Part shown: positions 20,565-64,000 of the stretch, piece by piece
Position numbering within the stretch: position 1 is the first letter of the stretch
Layout: each line of letters opens with the position of its first letter
NCBI RefSeq assembly: GCF_006345805.1
Contig: NC_043007.1
Location: 14,074,001 to 14,138,000 of the forward strand
Source: Octopus sinensis
Lineage: Eukaryota
Direction: 5' to 3'
DNA: 64,000 nt
The notes under the pieces: generated by a model
Told to the model about the DNA's origin: nothing
Databases searched by the model: none
What the model saw: the letters and a program-made list of their open reading frames with translations, nothing else
Position numbers and translations under genes: made by a program

Positions 20565-21099
20565 CAGCTTTGTCTATATTTGCATTTGTAATATATATCT
20601 AATTGTATTAGCAGCTGGACTTATAAATCTGTAGTTATGATTATACATATATACAAAGAGAGAGAGAGCGAGAGAGAGAAGGAGAGGGAGAGAGAGGTTG
20701 GAACTGTATTATAATTATAGTGTATGTTTGGGTGTGTAAATCTATGGGTGAATTTGTGTCTTTGTGTCTAGGAAACTATATGTATTAACCACTGTTCTTA
20801 TAAACCTTTGTACCATAAGCACAAGACCTGAAATTTCGAGGCAGGGTGCTAGTCGATTACATCAAGCCCAGTACACAACTGGTACTTTTTTTTTATCAAC
20901 CTTCGAAAGGATGAAAGGCAAAGTCAAGCCCGAAGGGATCTGAACCCAGAACCTAAAGACTGATGTAATGCCGCTAAGCATTTCGTCCAGCGTGCTAACG
21001 GTTCCACCAGCTCGTCGCCGTAACTGCTACACCTATTTAAATTCTCGTAAGTTTTTGCAGAAGTCCAATGCCGATAATATAAGATGTTATTATATATTT

Positions 21100-21510
21100 C
21101 TTTACTACCCACAAGGGGCTAAACATAAATGGGACAAACAAGGACAGACAAACAGATTAAGTCGATTACATCGACCCCAGTGCAAAACTGGTACTTTATT
21201 TATCGACCCCGAAAGGATGAAAGGCAAAGTCGACCTAGGCGGAATTTGAACTCAGAACGTAACAACAGACGAAATACCTATTTCTTTACTATCCACGAGG
21301 GGCTAAACACAGAGAGGACAAACAAGGACAGACACACAGATTAAATCGATTATATCGACCCCAGTGCGTAACTGGGGCTTATTTAATAGACCCCGAAAGG
21401 ATGAAAGGCAAAGTCGACCTCGGTGGAATTTGAACTCAGAACGTAGCGGCAGCCGAAATAATGCTAAGCATTTCGCTCGGCGTGCTAACGGTTCCACCAG
21501 CTTGTCGCCG
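21100..21510 (-). mobile_element. SINE family C dimer (head plus two tandem units)
   Basis: Unit junction AAAGAAATAG|GTATTTCG on the minus strand near 21270-21290. Confidence 0.85.
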
Positions 21511-25781: not shown

Positions 25782-26225
25782 GGATCTTTACGGTTTGAAC
25801 GGCAGTTTTTTTCTAGCGGTGTCATATGAAATTGACACCCATAATTATGACCCTAGTATCGATCTATTGCATTTCAATCTCTTTTAGGGTTATGGTTAGT
25901 TAGGGTTAGTTAGGGTTAGGGTTAGGGGTGGAGGGAAGGGTATCTTTTTTTCTTCACAAATGTAAATAAACCCAATCTGTTTCTTAAACGAGGGACATAT
26001 TCATACAGCACAGAATGTTGTTTAACTCAATAGACGTCAGTGATTGGTTGAAATTGCAGAAATTGAAGAAAAAATACGACAAATATCTTACAAACTATAG
26101 AATTTTCTCAATAAAGCCAAGAGAAAAAGATGTTTTAAATCCACATTCTACCAGTATACGAAGTTTAAAATTTTTTAGTGACCTAGAAATTATGTTAAAA
26201 ACTGCCGTTCAAACCGAAAAGATCC
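25782..26225. mobile_element. MITE with 29-bp TIRs, 8-bp TSD and internal TTAGGG repeats (Merlin-like)
   Basis: TIR GGATCTTTACGGTTTGAACGGCAGTTTTT and its reverse complement (1 mismatch). TSD GAGATATG at 25774-25781 and 26226-26233. Confidence 0.85.
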
Positions 26226-39459: not shown

Positions 39460-41070
<1,611 letters not shown>

Positions 41071-42855: not shown

Positions 42856-43453
42856 GGCGGCGAGCTGGCAGAATAGTTAGCACGCCGGCGAAATGCTTAG
42901 CGGTATTTCGTCTGCCGCTACGTTCTGAGTCCAAATTCCGCCGAGGTCGACCTTGCCTTTCATCCTTTCGGGGTCGATTAAATAAGTACCAATTACGCAC
43001 TGGGGTCAATATAATCGACTTAATACCTATGTCTGTCCTTGTTTGTCCCCTCTATGTTTAGCCCCTTGTGGGTAATAAAGAAATAGGTATTTCGTCTGCC
43101 GTTACGTTCTGAGTTCAAATTCCGCCGAGGTCGACTTTGCCTTTCATCCTTTCGGGGTCGATTAAATAAGTACCAGTTACGCACTGGGGTCGATATAATC
43201 GACTTAATCCGTTTGTCTGTCCTTGTTTGTCCCCTCTGTGTTTAGCCCCTTGTGGGTAGTAAAGAAATAGGTATTTCGTCTGCCGCTACGTTCTGAATTC
43301 AAATTCCGCCGAGGTCGATTTTGCCTTTCATCCTTTTGGGGTCGATAAATTAAGTACCAGTTACGCACTGGGGTCGATATAATCGACTTAATTGGTCTGT
43401 CTGTCCTTGTTTGTCTCCTCTGTGTTTAGCCCCTTGTGGGCAGTAAAGAAATA
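42856..43453 (+). mobile_element. SINE family C trimer (head plus three 184-bp units) inside one TSD
   Basis: GTATTTCG unit starts at 42903, 43087 and 43271. 20-bp TSD GGTAGGATGCGATT(T/C)AAGAA at 42836-42855 and 43454-43473. Confidence 0.92.
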
Positions 43454-43728
43454 GGTAGGATGCGATTCAAGAAAACTTGACTGCTATTTCTAGGAGATCA
43501 AAGGATCACGTAAAGGTTTCCTCGTTGGCTTGTGAGGCTTCCATCCCTAAAGTGTATCTACGTCTAAGACGTAGTTCTAAAATATGTTGTTATAACTGTA
43601 ACTAAAATTTCACTGACGCTGCTGTAACAATTAACATTTATTAGAATAAATAGCAAATGTATTTGCTGCAAATATCCATTTTCGGAAATTCGTCTTGACC
43701 GGACCGCCACCTTTAGATCTATCTTGTA

Positions 43729-44354: not shown

Positions 44355-44454
44355 NNNNNNNNNNNNNNNNNNNNNNNNNNNNNNNNNNNNNNNNNNNNNN
44401 NNNNNNNNNNNNNNNNNNNNNNNNNNNNNNNNNNNNNNNNNNNNNNNNNNNNNN
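44355..44454. other. Assembly gap (100 N)
   Basis: Run of exactly 100 n, probably an arbitrary-size gap. Confidence 0.99.
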
Positions 44455-45204: not shown

Positions 45205-46545
45205 AATGGATGCGTGGTGTTCAATCATATAATAAATTACTTCCCACTCTTAAGCAGCCAATATACAGTTGTCCATGCGACGGGTCTTCCAAGAGAAGAC
45301 CCGTCACAGAGAGGGTTTGACCATGAGATTTGTTAATGAACATGGCAAAACTGACACGAAGTGGGAATTGCAGTCTTCTGAACGTAAATGGGATTTCTGC
45401 TCCTGATGTTAAATGGCGGAGTGTCGTTGGTGAAGTGAAAAGCCAACGACGCGTCAGAAAGTCTCATTGCTACTTATGTACCGTCCCACCTGATAGTGCA
45501 TCACCTCATCCTGGCAGTATTCTTGTTGCAGTCCAAACATTGCAGCGTCAGAACCCTTGTTCACATACTTACAAACGTACTTTATGGACGTAACGGAGTT
45601 GCAAAACTCAACGTTGATGAGGGCATGGAAAGTCTTTGACAAGATCGTGCAGTAGGGAACAATCCATCTATTATGAACCGTGTGCTGTCCGATAGTTGCT
45701 GTGAAACTATCGTCTTCTGGTTTTCTCCGTCTGTATGATGGATACCCATCAGCACTTGACTGAGTTTCTTGTAGGAACTTCCTTGGAAACCTTTTCGAAC
45801 ATACGCTGTCTTTCAAGCATGGTGAGTTTATGTTGAATCCATGCCCACGTGGACCATGCACCATGTTTGCCTTGACTATTTCGTATAGTACGTTGTGTAA
45901 AACTGGATCGGGAAGCTCTGCAGAGATTATATTGTCGATGTCAGTGGATTTGATCTTCGTTGACAGTCAAAGTAGGATATAAGCATGTGGAAGGCCCCTT
46001 TTTTGCCATTCGATTGTGTACATGTCACACTGTATGGGTCCGAAGACTAGCCCGTTTTTATGAGCTCCATGAGAGCGACCAACTTCAGATGGAAAACTCA
46101 GGCGGGGTGGTCATGCCTGTCTTTAGGCTTTTGACCGAAGAAGAGTTCGGCCTGAATCTCCTTCCATTTGGGATTGCATGTGAAAGTAAAGAACAGGTCA
46201 GGCCTGCCGTAATGGCGGACAAAGGTCGTTGCATCCTGTGTTCTTGCATGCATGTATCGGGGACTTCCAGAGAACGTGGAGGGCAAGATGCAAACTCTTC
46301 CTATGCTTGTTGGAGCAGCAACATTGTTGCTGACATCTCGGAAATGGATGTAGCAGTCAGAGCGCAATTTTTTTTTTATGTGACCAAATGAAACGTTTTT
46401 CTCTCTGATTCCATTTTTGCACATATATCGACTGCAAATTGATGAAACAGCTGTTGAGATTGGTGGAGGTGATTACAGCAGTTGTTTCGGGTCATAAATC
46501 GGTATGAGTAGAAGTCCATGCAGGATACTGGCTTGTTGAGATGTT
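45205..46545 (-). mobile_element. Helitron Rep-helicase remnant, internally deleted
   Basis: Rep motifs SCMDFYSYRF, LPSTFSGSPRYMH, GRPDLFFTFTCNPKW, MVHGP, NRWIVPY and IKYVCKYVNKGSD, joined to the Pif1-type C-terminus FRRLQFPLRVSFAMFINKSHGQTL...HGQLYIGCLRVG. Confidence 0.93.
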
Positions 46546-50708: not shown

Positions 50709-50823
50709 AAGGCGGTGAGCTGGCAGAAACGTTAGCACGCCGGGCGAAATGCTTAGCGGTATATCGTCTGCCGCTACGTTCTGAGTTCAAATTCCGCCGC
50801 AGTCGACTTTGCCTTTCATCCTT
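50709..50823 (+). mobile_element. SINE family C, 3'-truncated at the start of the satellite
   Basis: Ends at CTTTCATCCTT and is followed directly by the 22/23-bp array. Confidence 0.88.
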
Positions 50824-53800
50824 AGATCGAAGAGGAGTTCCAAAAGAGATCAAAGAGAGTGCCGAAAGACATCAAAGAAGGTGCCGGAAGAGATAAAAAA
50901 GGGTGCCGAAATAGATCAAAGAGGGTGCCAAAATAGATCAAAGAGGGTGCCAAAATAGATCAAAGAGGGTGCCAAAAGAGATCAAAGAGGAGTTCCAAAG
51001 GAGATCAAAGAGGGTGCCAAAATAGATCAAAGAGGGAGCCGAAAGAGATCAAAGATGAGTTCCGAAAGAGATCAAAGAGGGTGCCGAAAGGGATCAAAGA
51101 GGGTGCCAAAATAGATCAAAGAGGGTGCCGAAAGAGATCAAAGAGGAGTTCCGAAAGAGTTCAAAGAGGGTGCCGAAAGAGATCAAAGAGGAGTTCCGGA
51201 AGAGATCAAAGAGGGTGCCGAAAGAGATCAAAGAGGGTGCCGAAAGAGATCAAAGAGGGTGCCGAAAGAAATCAAAGAGGGTGCCGAAATAGATCAAAGA
51301 GGGAGCCGAAAGAGATCAAAGAGGGTGCCGAAAGAAATCAAAGAGGCTACCAAAATAGATCAAAGAGGGAGCCGAAAGAGATCAAATAAAAGTTCCGAAA
51401 GAGATCAAAGAGGGTGCCGAAAGAAATCAAAGAGGGTGCCGAAAGAGATCAAACAGGGAGCCGAAAGAGATCAAAGAGGAGTTCCGAAAGAGATCAAAGA
51501 GGTGCCGAAAGAAATCAAAGAGGGTGCCGAAAGAGATCAAAGAGGAGTTCCGAAGAGATCAAAGAGGGTGCCGAAAGAGATCAAACAGGAGCCGAAAGAG
51601 ATCAAAGAGGAGTTCCGAAAGAGATAAAAGAGGGTGCCGAAAGAGATCAAAGAGGTGTTCCGAAAGAGATCAAAGAGGGTGCCGAAAGAAATCAAAGAGG
51701 GTGCCGAAAGAGATCAAACAGGGAGCCGAAAGAGATCAAAGAGGAGTTCCGAAAGAGATCAAAGAGGGTGCCGAAAGAAATCAAAGAGGGTGCCGAAAGA
51801 GATCAAAGAGGAGTTCCGAAAGAGATCAAAGAGGGTGCGAAAATAGATCAAAGAGGGAGCCGAAAGAGATCAAAGAGGAGTTCCGAAAGAGATCAAAGAG
51901 GGTGCCGAAAGAGATCAAAGAGGTGTTCCGAAAGAGATCAAAGAGGGTGCCGAAAGAAATCAAAGAGGGTGCCAAAGAGATCAAAGAGGAGTTCCGAAAG
52001 AGATCAAAGAGGAGTTCCGAAAGAGATCAAAGAGGGTGCCGAAAGAGATCAAAGAGGAGTTCCAAAAGAGATCAAAGAGGGTGCCGAAAGAAATCAAAGA
52101 GGCTGCCGAAAGAGATCAAAGAGGGTGCCGAAAGAGTGCCGAAAAAGATTAAAGAGGAGTGCCGACAAAGATCAAAGATGAGTGCCGACTAAGATCAAAG
52201 TTGAGCGCCGACAAAGATCAAAGATGAGTGTCGACAAAGATCAAAGATGAGTGCCGACAAAGATCAAAGAGGGTGCCGAAAAAGATCAAAGAGGAGTCCC
52301 GACAAAGATCAAAGAGGGTGCCGAAACAGTGCCGAAAAAGATCAAAGACGGTGCCGAAAAAGATCAAAGAGGAGTGCCGACAAAGATCAAAGATGAGTGC
52401 CGACAAAGATCAAAGTGAAGCGCCGACAATGATCAAAGATGAGTGCCGACAAAGATCAAAGAGGAGTGCCGACAAAGATCAAAGAGGGTGCCGAAAAAGA
52501 TCAAAGAGTAGTGCCGAAAAATATCAAAGAGGAGTGCCGAAAGAGATCAAAGAGGAGTTCCGAAAGAGATCAAAGAGGGTGCCAAAATAGATCAACGAGA
52601 GTGCCGAAAGAGATCAAAGAGGGTACCGAAAAAGATCAAAGAGGGTGCCGAAAAAGATCAAAGAGGATTGCCGACAAAGATCAAAGAGGAGTGCCGAAAA
52701 AGATCAAAGAGGAGTGCCGAAAGAGATCAAAGATGAGTGCCGAAAAAGATCAAAGAGGGTGCCGAAAAAGATCAAAGAGGAGTGCCGAGAAAGATCAAAG
52801 AGGAGTGCCGAGAAAGATCAAAGAGGAGTGCCGACAAAGATCAAAGAGGTTGCCGAAAAAGATCAAAGAGGAGTGCCGAAAGAGATCAAAGATGAGTGCC
52901 GAAAAAGATCAAAGAGGGTGCCGAAAAAGATCAAAGAGGAGTGCCGAAATAGATGAAAGAGGACTGCCGAAAAAGATCAAAGAGGAATGCCGACAAAGAT
53001 CAAAGAGGAGTGCCGAAAAAGATCAAAGAGGAGTGCCGACAAAGATCAAAGAGGTTGCCGAAAAGATCAAAGAGGAGTGCCGAAAGAGATCAAAGATGAG
53101 TGCCGAAAAAGATCAAAGAGGGTGCCGAAAAAGATCAAAGAAGGTGCCGAAATAGATGAAAGAGGACTGCCGAAAAAGATCAAAGAGGAGTGCCGACAAA
53201 GATCAAAGAGGAGTACCGAAAAAGATCAAGGATGGTGCCTAAAGATCAAAGAGGTGTGCCGACAAAGATCAAAGAGGAGTGCCGACAAAGATCAAATAGG
53301 AGTGCCGACAAAGATCAAAGAGGGTGCCGAAAAAGATCAAAGAGGAGTGCCGACAAAGATCAAAGAGGAGTGCCGAAAAAGATCAAAGAGGAGTGCCGAC
53401 AAAGATCAAAGAGGTTGCCGAAAAAGATCAAAGAGGAGTGCCGAAAGAGATCAAAGATGAGTGCCGAAAAAGATCAAAGAGGGTGCCGAAAAAGATCAAA
53501 GAAGGTGCCGAAATAGATGAAAGAGGACTGCCGAAAAAGATCAAAGAGGAATGCCGACAAAGATCAAAGAGGAGTACCGAAAAAGATCAAGGATGGTGCC
53601 GAAAGATCAAAGAGGTGTGCCGACAAAGATCAAAGAGGAGTGCCGACAAAGATCAAATAGAATGCCGACAAAGATCAAGGAGGAGTGCCGACAAAGATCA
53701 AAGAGGGAGCCGAAAAAGATCAAAGAGGAGTGCCGACAAAGATCAAAGAGGAGTGCCGAAAAAGATCAAAGAGGAGTGCCGACAAAGATCAAAGAGGTTG

Positions 53801-54400
53801 CCGAAAAAGATCAAAGAGGAGTGCCGAAAAAGATCAAAGAGGAGTGTCGACAAAGATCAAAGAGGGTGCCGAAAAAGATCAAATAGGAGTGCCGACAAAG
53901 ATCAAAGATAAGTGCCGAAAAAGATCAAAGAGGGTGCCGAAAAAGATCAAAGAGGAGTGCCGACAAAGATCAAAGAGGAGTGCCGAAAAAGATCAAAGAG
54001 GAGTGCCGACAAAGATCAAAGAGGTTGCCGAAAAAGATCAAAGAGGAGTGCCGAAAGAGATCAAAGATGAGTGCCGAAAAAGATCAAAGAGGGTGCCGAA
54101 AAAGATCAAAGAAGGTGCCGAAATAGATGAAAGAGGACTGCCGAAAAAGATCAAAGAGGAGTGCCGACAAAGATCAAAGAGGAGTACCGAAAAAGATCAA
54201 GGATGGTGCCGAAAGATCAAAGAGGTGTGCCGACAAAGATCAAAGAGGAGTGCCGACAAAGATCAAATAGGAGTGCCGACAAAGATCAAGGAGGAGTGCC
54301 GACAAAGATCAAAGAGGGAGCCGAAAAAGATCAAAGAGGAGTGCCGAAAAAGATCAAAGAGGAGTGCCGACAAAGATCAAAGAGGAGTGCCGAAAAAGAT
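50824..54400. repeat. Tandem array of 22/23-bp monomers (about 150-160 copies)
   Basis: Monomer GA(A/C)A(G/A)AGATCAAAGAGG(A)GT(G/T)CC, with higher-order repeats in the right half. Confidence 0.97.
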
Positions 54401-56520
54401 TTGAGAAATGAAGGGGAGAAGGGGAGGTAGGTATATTGAACATTCCAGAGAGGGGGATTTGAGAAATGAAGGGGAGGAAGGGGAGGTACGAATGTTGAAC
54501 ATTCCAGACAGGGGGATTTGAGAAATGAAGGGGAGGAAGGGGAGGTACGAATGTTGAACATTCCAGAGAGGGGGATTCGAGAAGTGAAGGGGAGGAAGGG
54601 GAGGTAGGAATATTGAACATTCCAGGGAGGGGGATTTGGGAAGTGAAGGGGAGGAAAAGGAGGTACGAATGTTGAACATTCCAGAGAGGGGATTTGAGAA
54701 GTGAAGGGGAGGAAGGGGAGGTAAAGACTTAATATATATAGTGGAATGTTCAACATTCTTACCTTCCCTTCCTTTCCATCATTTCTCATTCATACCTTCC
54801 CCTCCTTCCCTTCATTTCTCAAATCCTCCTCTCAAATGATTTGAGAAGTGAAGGGGAGGAAGGGGAGGTAGGAATGTTGAACAATCCATAGAGGGAGATT
54901 TGAGAAATGAAGGGAAGGAAGGGAAGGTAGGAATGTTGAACATTCCAGAGAGGAGGATTTGAGAAATGAAGGGAAGGAAGGGAAGGTATGAATGTTGAAC
55001 ATTCCAGAGAGGAGGATTTGAGAAATGAAGGGAAGGAAGGGAAGGTAGGAATGTTGAACATTCCATAGAGGGGGATTTGAGAAATGAAGGGAAGGAAGGG
55101 AAGGTAGGAATGTTGAACATTCCAGAGAGGAGGATTTGAGAAATGAAGGGAAGGAAGGGAAGGTATGAATGTTGAACATTCCAGAGAGGAGGATTTGAGA
55201 AATGAAGGGAAGGAAGGGAAGGTAGGAATGTTGAACATTCCATAGAGGGGGATTTGAGAATGAAGGGAAGGAGGGAAGGTAGGAATGTTGAACATTCAAG
55301 AGAGGAGGATTTGAGAAATGAAGGGAAGGAAGGAAGGTATGATGTTGAACATTCCAGAGAGGGGGATTTGAGAAGTGAAGGGGAGGAAGAGGAGGTAGGA
55401 ATATTGAACATTCCAGAGAGTGGGATTTGAGAAGTGAAGGGGAGGAGGGGAGGTAGGAATGTTGAACATTCTAGAGAGGGGGATTTGAGAAATGAAGGGA
55501 AGGAAGGGAAGGTAGGAATGTTGAACAATCCATAGAGGGGGATTTGAGAAATGAAGGGAAGGAAGGGAAGGTAGGAATGTTGAACAATCCATAGAGGGGG
55601 ATTTGAGAAATGAAGGGAAGGAAGGGAAGGTATGAATGTTGAACATTCCAGAGAGGGGGATTTGAGAAGTGAAGGGGAGGAAGAGGAGGTAGGAATATTG
55701 AACATTCCAGAGAGTGGGATTTGAGAAGTGAAGGGGAGGAAGGGGAGGTAGGAATGTTGAACATTCTAGAGAGGGGGATTTGAGAAATGAAGGGAAGGAA
55801 GGGAAGGTAGGAATGTTGAACATTCCAGAGAGGGGGATTTGAGAAGTGAAGGGGAGGAAGGGGAGGTAGGAATGTTGAACATTCCAGAGAGTGGGATTTG
55901 AGAAGTGAAGGGGAGGAAGGGGAGGTAGGAATGTTGAACATTCTAGAGAGGGGGAATTTGAGAAATGAAGGGAAGGAAGGGAAGGTAGGAATGTTGAACA
56001 TTCCAGAGAGGGGGATTTGAGAAGTGAAGGGGAGGAAGGGGAGGTAGGAATGTTGAACATTCCAGAGAGGGGGTTAGAGAAGTGAAGGGGAGGAAGGGGA
56101 GGTAGGAATGTTGAATATTCCAGAGAGGGGGATTTGAGAAATGAAGGGGAGGGTGGGGAGGTAGAAATGTTGAACATTCCAGAGAGGGGGGTTAGAGAAG
56201 TGAAGGGGAGGAAGGGAAGGTAGGAATGTTGAACATTCCAGAGAGGGGCATTTGAGAAATGAAGGGGTGGAAGGGGAGGAAATAATGTTGGACGTTCCAG
56301 AGAGGGGGATTTGAGAAATGAAGGGGAGGAAGGGGAGGTAGGAATATTGAACATTCCAGAGAGGGGGATTTGAGAAGTGAAGGGGAGGGTGGGGATGTAG
56401 GAATGTTGAACATTCTAGAGAGGGGGATTTGAGAAATGAAGTGGAGGAATGGGATGTAGGAATGTTGAACATTCCAGAGAGGGGGATTTTAGAAATGAAA
56501 GGGAGGAAGGGGAGGAATGT
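54398..56520. repeat. Tandem array of a 59-bp G/A-rich monomer (about 35 copies)
   Basis: GATTTGAGAA(A/G)TGAAGGG(G/A)AGGAAGGG(G/A)AGGTAGGAATGTTGAACATTCCAGAGAGGGG; the register shifts 1 nt per 60-nt line. Confidence 0.97.
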
Positions 56521-56912
56521 CATGAATGTGTTGAATGTCTGGAATGTCTGTAATTACTGGAATGTCAGGAATGTATACATATATATATCAGTATATATAC
56601 ATATATAGACCAGTATCGGGTGTCAAGCGATGTTGAGTGAGGGACAAACATAGATACACAAACACATACATATATACGACGAGCGTCCCTCAGTTTTCCA
56701 TTTACCAAATATACTCAGAAGGCTTCGTCGGCCCTCGGCTATAGTAAAAACACTTGCCCAAGGTGCCGCGCAGTGGGACTGAACTCGGAACTATGTGGTT
56801 CGTAAGCAAGCTACTTACCAAGCAGCCACTCCTATATGTATGCGTATATTTGTGTTGGCCTAGATTAGTAAGGGCAGGGTGATTCCCGCGTGTGTAATAG
56901 TTAGGAGTATGA

Positions 56913-58880: not shown

Positions 58881-59177
58881 TTATTAATAAACTTATGAAG
58901 CAGCGATGACAGCCTATCATCGAAGGTGGTCCTTCTACTGCTCAAAAACGAAATACTGACTGTATCTATTTCTGTCTTACAAATAATAGCTCTTTAACCA
59001 AGAGTTAATCTTTGACGAAGCATACATAAGCAAGAAATGTACCGTACTTTTTATTGCTTGGTAAAGAGGTTTAATCTAACTGTAAGTTAAGTTTGGTTAT
59101 TCAAATTATGTTCCACAATATATCTTCAATGTTATAACATTCCACATTTTGAAACATTTGTAGTACTCATTTTTTTT

Positions 59178-59612
59178 TACTACCCACAAGGAGCTAAACA
59201 CAGAGAGGGGACAAACAAGGACAGACAAAGGTATTAAGTCGATTACATCGACCCCCAGTCTGTACTTAATTTATCGACCCCGAAAGGATGAAAGGCAAAG
59301 TCGACCTCGGCGGAATTTGAACTCAGAACGTAACGACAGACGAAATACGGCTACGCATTTCGCCCGGCGTGCTAACGTTTCTTATTTCTTTACTGCCCAC
59401 AAGGGGCTAAACATAGAGGGGACAAAGAAGGACAGACAAAGGTATTAAGTCGATTACATCGATCCCCAGTGTGTAACTGGTACTTAATTTATCGACCCCG
59501 AAAGGATGAAAGGCAAAGTCGACCTCGGCGGAATTTGAACTCAGAACGTAACGGCAGGCGAAATATCGCTAAGCATTTCGACCGTTGCGCTAACGTTTCT
59601 GCCAGCTCGCTG
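59178..59612 (-). mobile_element. SINE family C dimer with a different restart point
   Basis: The junction on the minus strand is AAAGAAATA-AGAAACGTTAGC, not ...GTATTTCG. Confidence 0.85.
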
Positions 59613-60832: not shown

Positions 60833-60987
60833 AGTAAATCTATTTTAACCTCTTAAAGTATAAATCTGACAGAAATGTTGCTTTTGATTTTTGACCGGTA
60901 ATTTTTCTTTACTTTGTGTTACTTTTCGGTTAATTAATCTGATCAGTTTTTGAAAGTGACGCCTACTTTCTTTAAGAGTGACATTCT

Positions 60988-61962
60988 CTAGGAACTGGGT
61001 TGATGGCCCTGCCTGTGGCCAATACTGGCAGTCAGGAACTGGGTTGATGCCCTGCCTGTGGCCAATACTGGCAGTCAGGAACTGGGTTGATGCCCTGCCT
61101 GTGGCCAATACTGGCAGTCAGGAACTGGGTTGATGCCCTGCCTGTGGCCAATACTGGCAGTCTAGGAACTGGGTTGATGCCCTGCCTGTGGCCAATACTG
61201 GCAGTCAGGAACTGGGTTGATGCCCTGCCTGTGGCCAATACTGGCAGTCTAGGAACTGGGTTGATGCCCTGCCTGTGGCCAATACTGGCAGTCTAGGAAC
61301 TGGGTTGATGCCCTGCCTGTGGCCAATACTGGCAGTCTAGGAACTGGGTTGATGCCCTGCTGTGGCCAATACTGGCAGTCAGGAACTGGGTTGATGCCCT
61401 GCCTGTGGCAATACTGGCAGTCTAGGAACTGGGTTGATGCCCTGCCTGTGGCCAATACTGGCAGTCAGGAACTGGGTTGATGCCTGCCTGTGGCCAATAC
61501 TGGCAGTCTAGGAACTGGGTTGATGCCCTGCCTGTGGCCAATACTGGCAGTCTAGGAACTGGGTTGATGCCCTGCCTGTGGCCAATACTGGCAGTCTAGG
61601 AACTGGGTTGATGCCCTGCCTGTGGCCAATACTGGCAGTCTAGGAACTGGGTTGATGCCCTGCCTGTGGCAATACTGGCAGTCTAGGAACTGGGTTGATG
61701 CCCTGCCTGTGGCCAATACTGGCAGTCAGGAACTGGGTTGATGCCCTGCCTGTGGCCAATACTGGCAGTCAGGAACTGGCAGTCTAGGAACTGGGTTGAT
61801 GCCCTGCCTGCTGTGGCCAATACTGGCAGTCAGGAACTGGGTTGATGCCCTGCTTGTGGCCAATACTGGCAGTCTAGGAACTGGGTTGATGCTCTGCCTG
61901 TGGCCAATACTGGCAGTCAGGAACTGGGTTGATGCCCTGCCTGTGGCCAATACTGGCAGTCA
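60988..61962. repeat. Tandem array of a 43/44-bp monomer (about 22 copies)
   Basis: GGAACTGGGTTGATGCCCTGCCTGTGGCCAATACTGGCAGTC(T)A. Confidence 0.97.
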
Positions 61963-62560
61963 GCTTAATCTGGATGATTGCATTCAGAGTGGAAGCCGAC
62001 GTCTGTGGGGGATTGAGATGTCACTGTGATAGGCCTTCATGGTTTGTCTTGTCGCCTAAATGCCGGTCATTTCGTTCGTCACATCAAGCTAAACCTGACC
62101 ATTAAAGGGGCCATAGCTCAGGCTAATATTTCCTCAGTTCTGGAGCCGGCGGAATTATCCAGAAGTGATGGGAAGAGACCAGGTGGTCTTACGCTTTGTC
62201 CCATGCGTAAGAGATAGGTGCCTCCTCTGGGGGCATCACAGTTGGTGACTCCTTTGTTCCCTTCAACATCCTGGATGCTGCTGTAAAAGGGAGGATCACT
62301 GCTTCGGTAGCCGAACGGAACAAAATCCTAAAGTATCGGGACTTGGTGGAACCATTTCTTCCAGCCTTTGGCGTTTGAGATGTTTGGAGCTGGACCGCTG
62401 ACAACGAAGTTCTTGTCATCGTTAGTGGCTCTCGCCTTACCGAGACGTCGGGTGATGCTCGTGAAGACACTTGGCATTTCCAACGCTGTAACCTCGCCCA
62501 TCACCCACGTGATGCCGTGATCGTGTTGGCTTGCTTCACCAAGTCCCGTTAACCCTTATT
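61963..62560 (+). mobile_element. CRE-like non-LTR retrotransposon 3' fragment (RLE endonuclease region)
   Basis: GLHGLSC...RH..LN...LEPAELSRSDGKRPGGLTL...AERNKILKY...FQPLAFEMFG...FQR, with frameshifts. Confidence 0.8.
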
Positions 62561-63186: not shown

Positions 63187-64000
63187 GACGGCGAGCTGGC
63201 AGAAACGTTAGCACGCCGGGCGAAATGCGTAGCGGTATTTCGTCTACCGCTACGTTCTGAGTTCAAATTCCGCCGAGGTCGACTTTGCCTTTCATCCTTT
63301 CGGGGTCGATAAATTAAGTACCAGTTACGAACTGGGGTCGATGTAATCGACTTAATACCTATGTCTGTCCTTGTTTGTTCCCTCTGTGTTTAGCCCCTTG
63401 TGGGTAATAAAGAAATAGGTATTTCGTCTACCGCTACGTTCTGAGTTCAAATTCCGCCGAGGTCAACTTTGCCTTTCATCCGCCGCACTGGAGTCGATGT
63501 AATCGACTTAATACGTTTCTCTGTCCTTGTTTGTCCCCTCTGCGTTTAGCCCCTTGTGGGCAATAAAGAAATAGGTATTTCGTCTGCCGTTACGTTCTGA
63601 GTTCAAATTCCGCCGAGGTCAACTTTGCCTTTCATCCTTTCGGAGTCGATTAAATAAGTACCGGTTACGCACTGGGGTCAATGTAATCGACTTAATCCGT
63701 TTGTCTGTCCTTGTTTGTCCTCTCTGTGTTTAGTCCCTTGTGGGTAGTAAAGAAATAGGTATATCTTCTGCCGTTACGTTCTGAGTTCAAGTTCCGCCGA
63801 AGTCGACTTTGCCTTTCATCCTATCGGGGTCGATAAATAAAGTACCAGTTTCGCACTGGGGTCGGTGTAATCGACTTAATTCGTTTGTCTGTCCTTGTTT
63901 GTCCCCTCTGTGTTTAGCCCCTTGTGGGCAATAAAGAAATAGGTATTTCGTCTGCCGCTACGTTCTGAGTTCAAATTCCGCCGAGGTCAACTTTGCCTTT
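63187..64000 (+). mobile_element. SINE family C multimer (at least 5 units, runs off the window)
   Basis: Unit starts at 63235, 63419, 63575, 63759 and 63943. Confidence 0.92.

What the first reader, a model, noticed from the sequence alone, without database searches (positions are those of the whole stretch)
50824..54400. Natural TOPflash-like array: about 150 tandem TCF/LEF sites, most paired with a Helper-like GCCG
Seen: almost every 22/23-bp monomer contains AGATCAAAG (CTTTGATCT). Most also contain GCCG, which sits 5-6 nt from one site and 3-4 nt from the next. Known: CTTTGAT is the TCF/LEF HMG-box consensus used in Wnt reporters, and C-clamp TCFs (typical of invertebrates) also bind GCCG/RCCG Helper sites. 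Inference: a 3.6-kb Wnt-responsive enhancer or TCF/beta-catenin sink built from satellite DNA. The period of about two helical turns places the sites on one face of the helix. Motif presence alone does not prove function.
Basis: partly seen in the sequence, partly recalled or inferred. Interest (0 to 1): 0.8.

Follow-up and report, generated by a model that had tools for sequence, protein, structure and literature searches.

The report
Octopus satellite DNA carrying TCF-like motifs
A 3.6-kb run of about 155 copies of a 22/23-base unit, each holding a near-perfect binding motif for the Wnt-pathway factor TCF, is really there, but the sequence evidence says it is an ordinary octopus satellite repeat whose motif may be incidental, and only binding and reporter tests could show otherwise.

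Summary
Window 50824-54400 is a head-to-tail array of 22/23-bp units: 158 copies by TRF, 153 near-complete in my alignment. ATCAAAG occurs 135 times, AGATCAAAG 123 times and GCCG 125 times, and 101 units carry both. On the minus strand each unit reads TCTTTGATCTT, 10 of 11 bases of the optimal HMG site CCTTTGATCTT. A reversed GCCGAAA/GCCGACA lies 4-5 bp upstream, in the favourable 'AK' configuration. The Helper-like element fits only the minimal RCCG and the nematode GCCRAnW consensus. The fly and vertebrate extended Helper motifs (GCCGCCR, RCCGCC) occur 0 times.

The array behaves like satellite DNA. It has two sub-domains and recent 361/610/971-bp block duplications. It sits between a truncated SINE and another satellite, and no gene was recognised nearby. 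A related 9.2-kb array lies at a non-collinear locus on an Octopus vulgaris chromosome. There, blocks of a derived 10-bp unit (GATCAAACCG) that has lost the CAAAG core have amplified.

The ATCAAAG core is the least variable segment in both arrays. GCCG is no less variable than the spacers, and neighbouring satellites show equally invariant blocks. As a TCF sink, 135 sites are negligible against about 5x10^5 background 7-mers per genome. Function as a Wnt enhancer or sink is neither shown nor excluded.

The parts
50709..50823 (+). 3'-truncated copy of a dispersed SINE-like element with a B-box-like GAGTTCAAATTCC. It forms the 5' boundary of the array.
   Evidence: BLAST of the flank against the window finds at least 19 copies at 75-94% identity, all ending at the array junction. 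The same element forms the 184-bp tandem units at 42902-43457 and 63331-64000.
50824..52129 (+). Array sub-domain A. It mixes a 22-mer AGATCAAAGAGGGTGCCGAAAG with a 23-mer AGATCAAAGAGGAGTTCCGAAAG; the 23-mer lacks GCCG. GCCA variants cluster at the 5' edge.
   Evidence: Unit-by-unit alignment; variant counts; TRF.
52130..54400 (+). Array sub-domain B. It contains 23-mers AGATCAAAGAGGAGTGCCGACAA and ...GAAAA, and the 22-mer AGATCAAAGAGGGTGCCGAAAA. TRF also reads it at periods 68 and 91.
53266..54400 (+). Recently duplicated multi-unit blocks within sub-domain B, at offsets of 16, 27 and 43 units (361, 610 and 971 bp).
   Evidence: Lag-identity peaks at 361, 610 and 971 bp. There is a run of 10 identical consecutive units (53312 vs 53922), and 10-unit windows at or above 97.8% identity.
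50824..54400 (-). The motif as read on the minus strand, repeated per unit: reversed Helper-like heptamer (TTTCGGC/TGTCGGC), a 4-5 bp spacer, then the HMG-like 11-mer TCTTTGATCTT.
   Evidence: spacing 5 bp 52 times, 4 bp 50 times; NCTTTGWWSWW 83; CTTTGWWS 127. Consensus definitions come from PMC4154663 and PMC3916239.
54398..56515 (+). Adjoining 59-bp satellite, joined to the 23-mer array through a shared GAT. It is interrupted by an inverted piece at 54724-54837. This is a different repeat family that forms the 3' boundary.
   Evidence: TRF; sequence. There is no similarity to the 23-mer beyond shuffled controls.

Best explanation
This is a lineage-specific (Octopus) non-coding satellite/minisatellite with a 22/23-bp unit.

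Shown: it is a tandem array with sub-domains and recently duplicated multi-unit blocks. It lies in SINE-rich DNA where no gene was recognised, next to another satellite. A related array exists at another locus in Octopus vulgaris.

Inferred: one founder unit happened to contain AGATCAAAGA and GCCGA. The array then grew and is homogenised by unequal exchange and replication slippage, so all about 135 TCF-like sites are copies by descent, not independently selected sites. Because the HMG-like site is near-optimal and the Helper-like CCG sits at a permissive distance, a C-clamp TCF would probably bind the naked DNA in vitro. The array is most likely not a selected Wnt-response element. Any TCF occupancy in vivo would be incidental and would depend on chromatin state.
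For: Tandem structure with periods 22/23/45/68/91 and 85% unit identity.

Two sub-domains and subtype-defining variants at only six positions (11, 13, 14, 16, 21, 23).

Block duplications at 361, 610 and 971 bp, with up to 10 identical consecutive units.

Boundaries are a truncated SINE and a 59-bp satellite joined by a 3-nt microhomology.

ORFs across the array are artefacts of a T-poor strand. The frame is broken by the 22/23 mixture, there are no Pfam hits, and the only homologue is another array-derived 'hypothetical protein'.

The related O. vulgaris array (L001 = OX597818.1:51117656-51138408) has the unit GATCAAAGACGGTGCCGACAGA, about 394 copies, and non-collinear flanks. Inside it, blocks of a derived 10-mer GATCAAACCG (about 84 copies of TCAAACCGG) have amplified although CAAAG became CAAAC.

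GCCG is no less variable than the spacers (Mann-Whitney p = 0.27 and 0.76).

In the window, low-frequency variants per position are similar inside and outside the core when matched by base. A positions show 0-3 non-consensus copies in the core and 2-4 outside. G and C positions show 7-9 in the core and 0-24 outside.

Neighbouring 59-mer and 43-mer satellites have equally invariant 7-bp blocks, and they carry TEAD-like GGAATG/CATTCC and CCAAT motifs. This illustrates the look-elsewhere problem.

No coding gene was recognised in the 64 kb, only Helitron and other transposon remnants.

Scattered, transposon-associated satellite arrays are well documented in molluscs (PMC7492417, PMC8268682). The O. 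vulgaris genome is 66% repeats with 11.6% SINEs (PMC13282606).
Against: ATCAAAG is the least variable 7-bp window of the unit in the window array, and rank 2 (after GATCAAA) in the O. vulgaris array. Variability there is 0.14-0.17, against a mean of 0.62-0.64 for all 7-bp windows. Mann-Whitney core versus rest gives p = 0.011 and 0.0008.

The positions that differ between subfamilies (11-13, 21, 23) fall mostly where a bipartite HMG+Helper model is degenerate. This gives a nominal hypergeometric p of about 0.02 by my own hand calculation on six positions; it is post hoc and no tool call backs it.

The joint occurrence of a near-optimal HMG site and a CCG element in a permitted configuration is expected in only about 10^-4 of random units.

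CpG is not depleted in the arrays (observed/expected 0.97 and 1.16, against 0.83-0.85 in the flanks).

None of these points distinguishes a young array from a constrained one.
Confidence: 0.7

Rival explanations
1. Natural multimerised Wnt-response element. Octopus TCF (HMG box plus C-clamp) binds each unit through TCTTTGATCTT and the upstream reversed GCCGA(A/C)A, recruits beta-catenin when Wnt is on, and drives a nearby gene as a very strong enhancer.
For: The HMG-like site matches 10 of 11 bases of the optimum. The Helper-like element is in AK4/AK5, near the best-bound AK6, and is also KK0 with respect to the neighbouring site. The heptamers fit the nematode Helper consensus GCCRAnW 130 times. 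Concatemerised HMG or HMG+Helper sites are sufficient for Wnt reporters. The core is the least variable part of the unit in two arrays.
Against: There is no GCCGCCR, RCCGCC or GCSGS. In the one fly Helper motif tested by mutagenesis, all 7 positions were needed for maximal activation. GCCG varies as freely as the spacers. Units that lost CAAAG have amplified in the O. vulgaris array. No gene or promoter was recognised within the window. The same family forms a 9-kb array at an unrelated locus. [quoted passage not shown]
Confidence: 0.08
2. Transcription-factor sink or heterochromatin platform. The array titrates TCF (with Groucho or beta-catenin), or uses bound factor to nucleate silent chromatin, as proposed for Pax3/Pax9 sites in mouse major satellite.
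For: High local density of strong sites: 135 in 3.6 kb here and 294 in 9.2 kb in L001. Hoverter et al. suggest that Helper sites may act as a local sink (PMC4267635). A precedent for factor sites in satellites is reviewed in PMC9324158.
Against: Outside the array the window has 12 CTTTGAT/ATCAAAG per 60.4 kb, which extrapolates to about 5.6x10^5 per 2.8-Gb genome. The array therefore adds about 0.02-0.03% more 7-mer sites. The abundance of the family genome-wide is unknown; only two loci were found, and that figure is limited by the tools.
Confidence: 0.07
3. The conserved box is GATCAAA(G), bound by some other protein such as a Sox-type or other HMG-box factor or a dedicated satellite-binding protein. 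This would be analogous to conserved boxes such as the CENP-B box in other satellites, and the TCF match would be a coincidence of HMG-box specificity.
For: In L001 the least variable window is GATCAAA, not ATCAAAG. The derived 10-mer keeps GATCAAAC and CCG but not CAAAG. From my own knowledge, ATCAAAG also fits the general Sox consensus WWCAAWG.
Against: There is no direct evidence for any binding protein. Invariant blocks of similar strength occur in the neighbouring 59-mer and 43-mer arrays, so a low-variability block is not in itself evidence of binding.
Confidence: 0.1
4. The repeat encodes a lysine/arginine/glutamate-rich repeat protein, as the O. vulgaris annotation suggests for P0001.
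For: Open reading frames of up to 255 aa occur on the + strand. One array-derived 'hypothetical predicted protein' is annotated in O. vulgaris.
Against: The unit length is 22/23 bp in irregular order, so the frame changes every few units. All three + frames are open because T is only 10.7% of that strand. There are no Pfam hits. No homologue exists among 5.8 and 1.8 billion proteins except the other array.
Confidence: 0.02

Closest known systems
Satellite/minisatellite DNA families of molluscs, including short arrays scattered among or carried by transposons (oyster satellitome and Helentron-associated repeats; PMC8268682, PMC7492417)
   Same: Head-to-tail units, subfamilies and higher-order blocks. 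More than one locus. Embedded among SINEs and next to another satellite, with a Helitron remnant 4.3 kb away.
   Different: The unit is very short (22/23 bp). No transposon carrier could be demonstrated: the unit shows no similarity to the flanking SINEs and there is no Helitron ORF near the O. vulgaris array. Genome-wide abundance is unknown.
Bipartite HMG-Helper TCF sites of Wnt cis-regulatory modules (Drosophila Pangolin, C. elegans POP-1, human TCF-1E/4E; PMC4154663, PMC3916239, PMC4267635)
   Same: CTTTGATCTT core. A CCG-containing element lies within 10 bp in the AK orientation at 4-5 bp. The heptamer fits GCCRAnW.
   Different: Natural modules have a few degenerate sites, not about 135 near-identical ones. 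The extended Helper GCCGCCR/RCCGCC is absent. No target gene, occupancy or Wnt response is known.
TOPflash/POPTOP-type synthetic reporters (3-16 multimerised HMG sites before a minimal promoter)
   Same: The same AGATCAAAG core, regularly multimerised.
   Different: About ten to forty times more copies. No adjacent minimal promoter was identified. The base after the core is A rather than G (AGATCAAAGA here versus AGATCAAAGG in the reporter, the latter from my own knowledge).
Transcription-factor-bound tandem repeats: GGAA microsatellite enhancers bound by EWS-FLI1 (PMC6075149), and factor sites in mouse major satellite used for heterochromatin formation (reviewed in PMC9324158)
   Same: A tandem repeat whose unit is itself a factor binding motif. 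This is how the array could work if it is bound.
   Different: In those cases binding and function were shown experimentally. Here there is only a motif match.

Membership tests
Satellite / minisatellite DNA | Head-to-tail tandem units with high mutual identity | tested here: met
   TRF: 158 copies, 85% matches. 153 aligned units.
Satellite / minisatellite DNA | Subfamilies, higher-order periodicity and block duplication (homogenisation by unequal exchange) | tested here: met
   Periods 45/68/91. Lags at 361, 610 and 971 bp. Runs of up to 10 identical consecutive units.
Satellite / minisatellite DNA | The family is present at more than one locus or in related genomes | tested here: met
   A 9.2-kb related array on O. 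vulgaris chromosome OX597818.1 with non-collinear flanks. A full census was not possible with these tools.
Satellite / minisatellite DNA | Non-coding | tested here: met
   The frame is broken by the 22/23 mixture. No Pfam hits. No homologues except the array-derived P0001.
Wnt cis-regulatory module with bipartite TCF sites | HMG site matching SCTTTGWWSWW / CTTTGWWS | tested here: inconclusive
   CTTTGWWS occurs 127 times and NCTTTGWWSWW 83 times, but strict SCTTTGWWSWW occurs 0 times because position 1 is T. The match is 10 of 11 to CCTTTGATCTT.
Wnt cis-regulatory module with bipartite TCF sites | Helper site (fly GCCGCCR; vertebrate RCCGCC/GCSGS; worm GCCRAnW; minimal RCCG) within about 10 bp | tested here: inconclusive
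   GCCGCCR 0, RCCGCC 0, GCSGS 1; RCCG 129; GCCRAnW 130. The octopus C-clamp preference is unknown.
Wnt cis-regulatory module with bipartite TCF sites | Permissive orientation and spacing (AK about 2-9, best AK6; FF0) | tested here: met
   Reversed Helper-like heptamer 5 bp (52 cases) or 4 bp (50 cases) upstream of the 11-bp site (rules).
Wnt cis-regulatory module with bipartite TCF sites | Sites conserved above neighbouring positions | tested here: inconclusive
   The core is less variable (p = 0.011 and 0.0008) but GCCG is not (p = 0.27 and 0.76). Similar invariant blocks occur in neighbouring satellites. The two arrays share ancestry.
Wnt cis-regulatory module with bipartite TCF sites | TCF/beta-catenin occupancy and Wnt-dependent activation of a linked gene | not testable with these tools
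   No chromatin, expression or binding data are available. No gene was recognised in the window.
Wnt cis-regulatory module with bipartite TCF sites | The host TCF possesses a C-clamp | not tested
   The literature says most invertebrate TCFs do (PMC3916239; PMC3896468 abstract). The octopus protein was not examined.
Transposon-carried tandem repeats (Helitron/Helentron- or SINE-derived satellites) | The unit is derived from, or the array lies inside, a defined mobile element | tested here: not met
   No unit-to-SINE or unit-to-flank similarity beyond shuffled controls. The Helitron_like_N remnant is 4.3 kb away. No comparable ORF lies near the L001 array.

The most novel reading that the evidence does not exclude
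An Octopus-specific satellite family made of hundreds of near-optimal bipartite TCF (HMG + C-clamp) sites is bound by TCF in vivo and acts as a natural 'TOPflash'. It would be a Wnt-responsive super-enhancer or a dosage-buffering platform for TCF/beta-catenin, with the GATCAAAG box kept by selection. This would contradict the view that dense clusters of perfect HMG sites do not occur in natural Wnt-response elements.
Probability: 0.1. Interest if true: 0.75.

Novelty: new member of a known kind. Interest (0 to 1): 0.35.

Why it matters
If the array is only a satellite, its value is descriptive. It would be a previously uncharacterised 22/23-bp repeat family of Octopus genomes, and a caution that tandem repeats routinely multiply whatever factor motif their founder unit contained. 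The neighbouring arrays multiply TEAD-like and CCAAT motifs in the same way.

If TCF really occupies it, it would be the first natural counterpart of the multimerised reporters used across the Wnt field. It would be a ready-made probe for the DNA preferences of a lophotrochozoan C-clamp TCF. It would also be an example of repeat expansion creating regulatory or buffering capacity in a cephalopod genome. The question is cheap to settle, by EMSA and reporter assays with a few units and by inspecting chromatin data with multi-mapping reads kept.

Tried and rejected
1. Protein-space searches to find more arrays. These used the array ORF, P0001 and all-against-all HMMER. They returned only P0001. 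P0002 is an unrelated QQRGVSQQLGDSCS repeat.

2. The ORF of the adjoining 59-mer satellite, tried as bait for an orthologous locus: no hits.

3. Exact-product look-ups of window ORFs to locate the window in an assembly: not on record.

4. An 18-mer scan of the metagenome and prokaryotic genome collections gave 120+ single chance matches each and no tandem array. This was uninformative and, in hindsight, predictable.

5. Origin of the unit from the flanking SINE, the L001 flanks or the 59-mer: no alignment beat shuffled units at p <= 0.05.

6. Coding repeat: rejected (frame breaks, no Pfam hits).

7. Known RNA families or tRNA genes in the window: none.

8. Gapped self-BLAST to delimit duplicated blocks merely aligned the whole array to itself. 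It was replaced by unit-level run analysis.

9. CpG decay as the explanation for Helper variability: weak. G to A at the CpG is the commonest change at that position, but CpG observed/expected is 0.97-1.16 in the arrays and 0.83-0.85 in the flanks.

10. Literature search for a natural TCF-site satellite: none found.
Full report
WHAT IS THERE

Window 50824-54400 is a single uninterrupted tandem array. TRF reports period 23, 158.2 copies, 85% matches, 4% indels and score 4202, and also reads it at periods 45, 68 and 91. A wrap-around alignment to the consensus AGATCAAAGAGGAGTGCCGAAAA yields 161 rows, 153 of them near-complete units. Successive ATCAAAG cores are 23 bp apart 63 times and 22 bp apart 47 times. 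The + strand is 75% purine and only 10.7% T.

Counts inside the array: AGATCAAAG 123, ATCAAAG 135, GCCG 125. Exact ATCAAAG and GCCG occur together in 101 of 153 units. GCCG lies 5 nt (43 cases) or 6 nt (50 cases) after one 9-mer and 4 nt (91 cases) before the next. All 69 matches to an 18-mer of the unit (up to 3 mismatches) fall inside the array, against 0.03 expected.

ANATOMY

The array has two sub-domains.
- Domain A (50824-52129) mixes a 22-mer ...GAGGGTGCCGAAAG with a 23-mer ...GAGGAGTTCCGAAAG. The 23-mer has TCCG, not GCCG.
- Domain B (52130-54400) uses ...GAGGAGTGCCGACAA, ...GAGGAGTGCCGAAAA and the 22-mer ...GAGGGTGCCGAAAA.

The 3' third was built by recent duplication of multi-unit blocks. 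Identity peaks at lags of 361, 610 and 971 bp. There are runs of up to 10 identical consecutive units (53312 vs 53922) and 10-unit windows at 97.8% identity or more.

The 5' boundary is a 3'-truncated copy of a SINE-like element that has at least 19 copies in the window. The 3' boundary is a direct junction, through a shared GAT, with an unrelated 59-bp satellite.

The long + strand ORFs are a by-product of a T-poor repeat. The irregular 22/23 mixture changes the frame every few units, and there are no Pfam hits. No Rfam family or tRNA was found in the window. The ORFs tested revealed no host gene, only a Helitron_like_N remnant at 46101-46472(-). This was not a full eukaryotic gene prediction.

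RELATIVES

Protein-space searches with the array's ORFs found one hit among 5.8 and 1.8 billion proteins. It is a 'hypothetical predicted protein' of Octopus vulgaris that is itself encoded by a repeat. Its locus is L001 = OX597818.1:51117656-51138408, assembly GCA_951406725.2. It holds a 9.2-kb array of the 22-mer GATCAAAGACGGTGCCGACAGA with about 394 copies. This unit differs from the window's 22-mer at two positions.

The flanks of L001 share only dispersed repeats with the window (75-89% identity, not collinear). This is therefore a second locus of the same family, and the window is evidently from an Octopus-type genome.

Inside the L001 array lie many blocks of a derived 10-bp unit, GATCAAACCG (about 84 copies of TCAAACCGG). 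This unit keeps GATCAAA and CCG but has CAAAC in place of CAAAG.

HOW GOOD IS THE TCF MATCH?

The published definitions are as follows.
- HMG site: SCTTTGWWSWW, optimum CCTTTGATCTT.
- Fly Helper: GCCGCCR, with the first four bases most critical and all seven needed for full activity in the one motif tested.
- Vertebrate Helper: RCCG, RCCGCC or GCSGS.
- C. elegans Helper: GCCRAnW.
- Best configurations: AK6 and FF0. AK5 was used originally, humans tolerate AK2-9, and POP-1 uses AK7.
(Sources: PMC4154663, PMC4267635, PMC3916239.)

On the minus strand the unit reads TTT(T/G)TCGGC-AC(T)CC-TCTTTGATCTT. The HMG-like 11-mer matches the optimum at 10 of 11 positions; position 1 is T, so strict SCTTTGWWSWW scores 0, NCTTTGWWSWW 83 and CTTTGWWS 127. 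The reversed heptamers are GCCGAAA (87) and GCCGACA (34). They lie 5 bp (52 cases) or 4 bp (50 cases) upstream, that is AK5/AK4, and directly abut the neighbouring site (KK0). They match the fly consensus at 5 or 6 of 7 positions. GCCGCCR, RCCGCC and GCSGS occur 0, 0 and 1 times, while GCCRAnW occurs 130 times and RCCG 129 times.

For the Helper it depends on which species' consensus applies. Whether octopus TCF has a C-clamp was not tested; the literature says most invertebrate TCFs do.

The 'one face of the helix' remark holds only for neighbours. Successive sites rotate by about 34 degrees (22-mer) or 69 degrees (23-mer).

IS THE MOTIF UNDER CONSTRAINT?

- For constraint: ATCAAAG is the least variable 7-bp window in the window array (tied with AGATCAA) and second to GATCAAA in L001. 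Its summed non-consensus fraction is 0.14-0.17, against a mean of 0.62-0.64. Mann-Whitney core versus rest gives p = 0.011 and 0.0008.
- Against constraint, point 1: GCCG is not less variable than the spacers (p = 0.27 and 0.76).
- Against constraint, point 2: in the window the contrast is produced by six positions (11, 13, 14, 16, 21, 23) where a variant was carried to high copy number by block amplification. At the remaining positions, counts matched by base are alike inside and outside the core. A positions show 0-3 versus 2-4, and G/C positions 7-9 versus 0-16.
- Against constraint, point 3: a cyclic-shift view gives rank 1-2 of 22-23 windows, so p is roughly 0.04-0.09 per array, and the two arrays share ancestry.
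- Against constraint, point 4: the neighbouring 59-mer and 43-mer satellites contain equally or more invariant 7-bp blocks.
- Against constraint, point 5: the amplified 10-mer derivative shows that units without the CAAAG core spread freely.

By my own hand calculation, the subfamily-diagnostic positions fall preferentially where a bipartite model is degenerate (nominal p about 0.02). This rests on six events chosen after looking at the data.

I read all this as a weak signal that the GATCAAA(G) box is the stable anchor of the family. That is compatible with protein binding but not evidence for TCF in particular.

CHANCE AND LOOK-ELSEWHERE

A random 22/23-bp unit carries CTTTGAT on either strand with probability 0.003-0.005. 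With a GCCG in AK2-9 or FF0-11 as well, the probability is about 1-2 x 10^-4.

This 64-kb window alone holds several distinct minisatellite families. The O. vulgaris genome is 2.8 Gb and 66% repeats (PMC13282606). One such coincidence for one particular factor, and many across all factors, is therefore unsurprising genome-wide. The adjoining arrays illustrate this. The 59-mer multiplies GGAATG/CATTCC, which is TEAD-like by my own knowledge, and the 43-mer multiplies CCAAT.

MECHANISM

Most likely (about 0.7) this is neutral satellite DNA. A founder unit that happened to contain the bipartite motif was expanded and is homogenised by unequal exchange or slippage. The block duplications, sub-domains, microhomology junction and second locus are shown; the neutrality is inferred. 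Naked units would probably bind a C-clamp TCF in vitro.

As a sink, the array is quantitatively negligible unless the family is far more abundant than seen. The background density is 12 core 7-mers per 60.4 kb, about 5.6x10^5 per genome.

As an enhancer, it lacks a recognisable target. [quoted passage not shown] It belongs to a family that also forms a 9-kb array elsewhere.

The rival explanations are a Wnt enhancer (0.08), a sink or heterochromatin platform (0.07), another protein binding the GATCAAA box (0.10) and a coding repeat (0.02).

COMPARISON AND NOVELTY

The array is a new member of a known kind: satellite or minisatellite DNA of a mollusc genome (compare PMC8268682 and PMC7492417). 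If it works at all as a regulatory element, it would work like factor-bound tandem repeats such as the GGAA microsatellite enhancers (PMC6075149) or like a TOPflash reporter. Membership of the class 'Wnt cis-regulatory module' is not established. The orientation and spacing test is met, the HMG and Helper consensus tests are inconclusive, and occupancy and response are untestable here.

My literature search found no natural satellite made of TCF sites.

LIMITS

Only one related locus could be retrieved. No cephalopod assembly, chromatin data or expression data were available. The decisive experiments and the census are listed under next steps.

Noticed in passing
window 54398-54723, 54724-54837 (inverted piece), 54838-56515: A 59-bp satellite of about 34 units abuts the 23-mer array through a shared GAT. 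Each unit holds GGAATGTTGAACATTCC, two inverted TEAD/MCAT-like hexamers (21 GGAATG, 23 CATTCC). Like the 23-mer array, it is 75% purine on the + strand. A short inverted segment interrupts it.
   Followed up: partly
window 60987-61963: A 43-bp array of about 22 very homogeneous units (1.5% non-consensus). Each unit contains GGCCAAT, a CCAAT box-like motif, 20 times in all.
   Followed up: partly
window 21095-21460, 42902-43457, 59172-59600, 63331-64000: The SINE-like element that flanks the array also occurs as 2-3 copy tandem arrays with a period of 184 bp (218 bp at 59172), so SINE units are arranged head to tail.
   Followed up: no
window 46101-46472 (-), with neighbouring ORFs at 45454-45966 (-): A Helitron_like_N domain (Pfam E = 3.9e-22) marks a Helitron remnant 4.3 kb from the array. 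Mollusc Helentrons are known carriers of tandem repeats, but no link to this array could be shown.
   Followed up: partly
L001 2318-2803, 3141-3305, 3623-3806, 4350-5003, 5906-6102, 7230-7483, 8637-8890, 10082-10341, 10874-11048: Blocks of a 10-bp repeat (GATCAAACCG; 20-bp form CAAACCGGTTCAAACCGGAT containing the palindrome AACCGGTT) are nested in the O. vulgaris 22-mer array. Two identical-length blocks lie 1407 bp apart, which indicates a higher-order repeat.
   Followed up: partly
window 56600-56830 and L001 11385-11800: The same SINE type (..ggttgtcaagcgatggtg..gacaaacacagac.. with an internal microsatellite) follows the satellite island in the same orientation at both loci. Whether this is coincidence in SINE-dense DNA or a real association was not resolved.
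   Followed up: no
window 44355-44454: A run of exactly 100 N, which is an assembly gap.
   Followed up: no
window 25884-25927; 39479-40764: A short interstitial TTAGGG telomere-type repeat, and a 1.3-kb tract of successive trinucleotide repeats (GTC, GTA, GTG, TGG, TAG).
   Followed up: no
L001 10001-10753 and 1-7468: The O. vulgaris annotation calls a 250-aa 'hypothetical predicted protein' (P0001) entirely from the repeat array, and an 840-aa gene model overlaps it. Both are likely annotation artefacts of a stop-poor repeat.
   Followed up: partly
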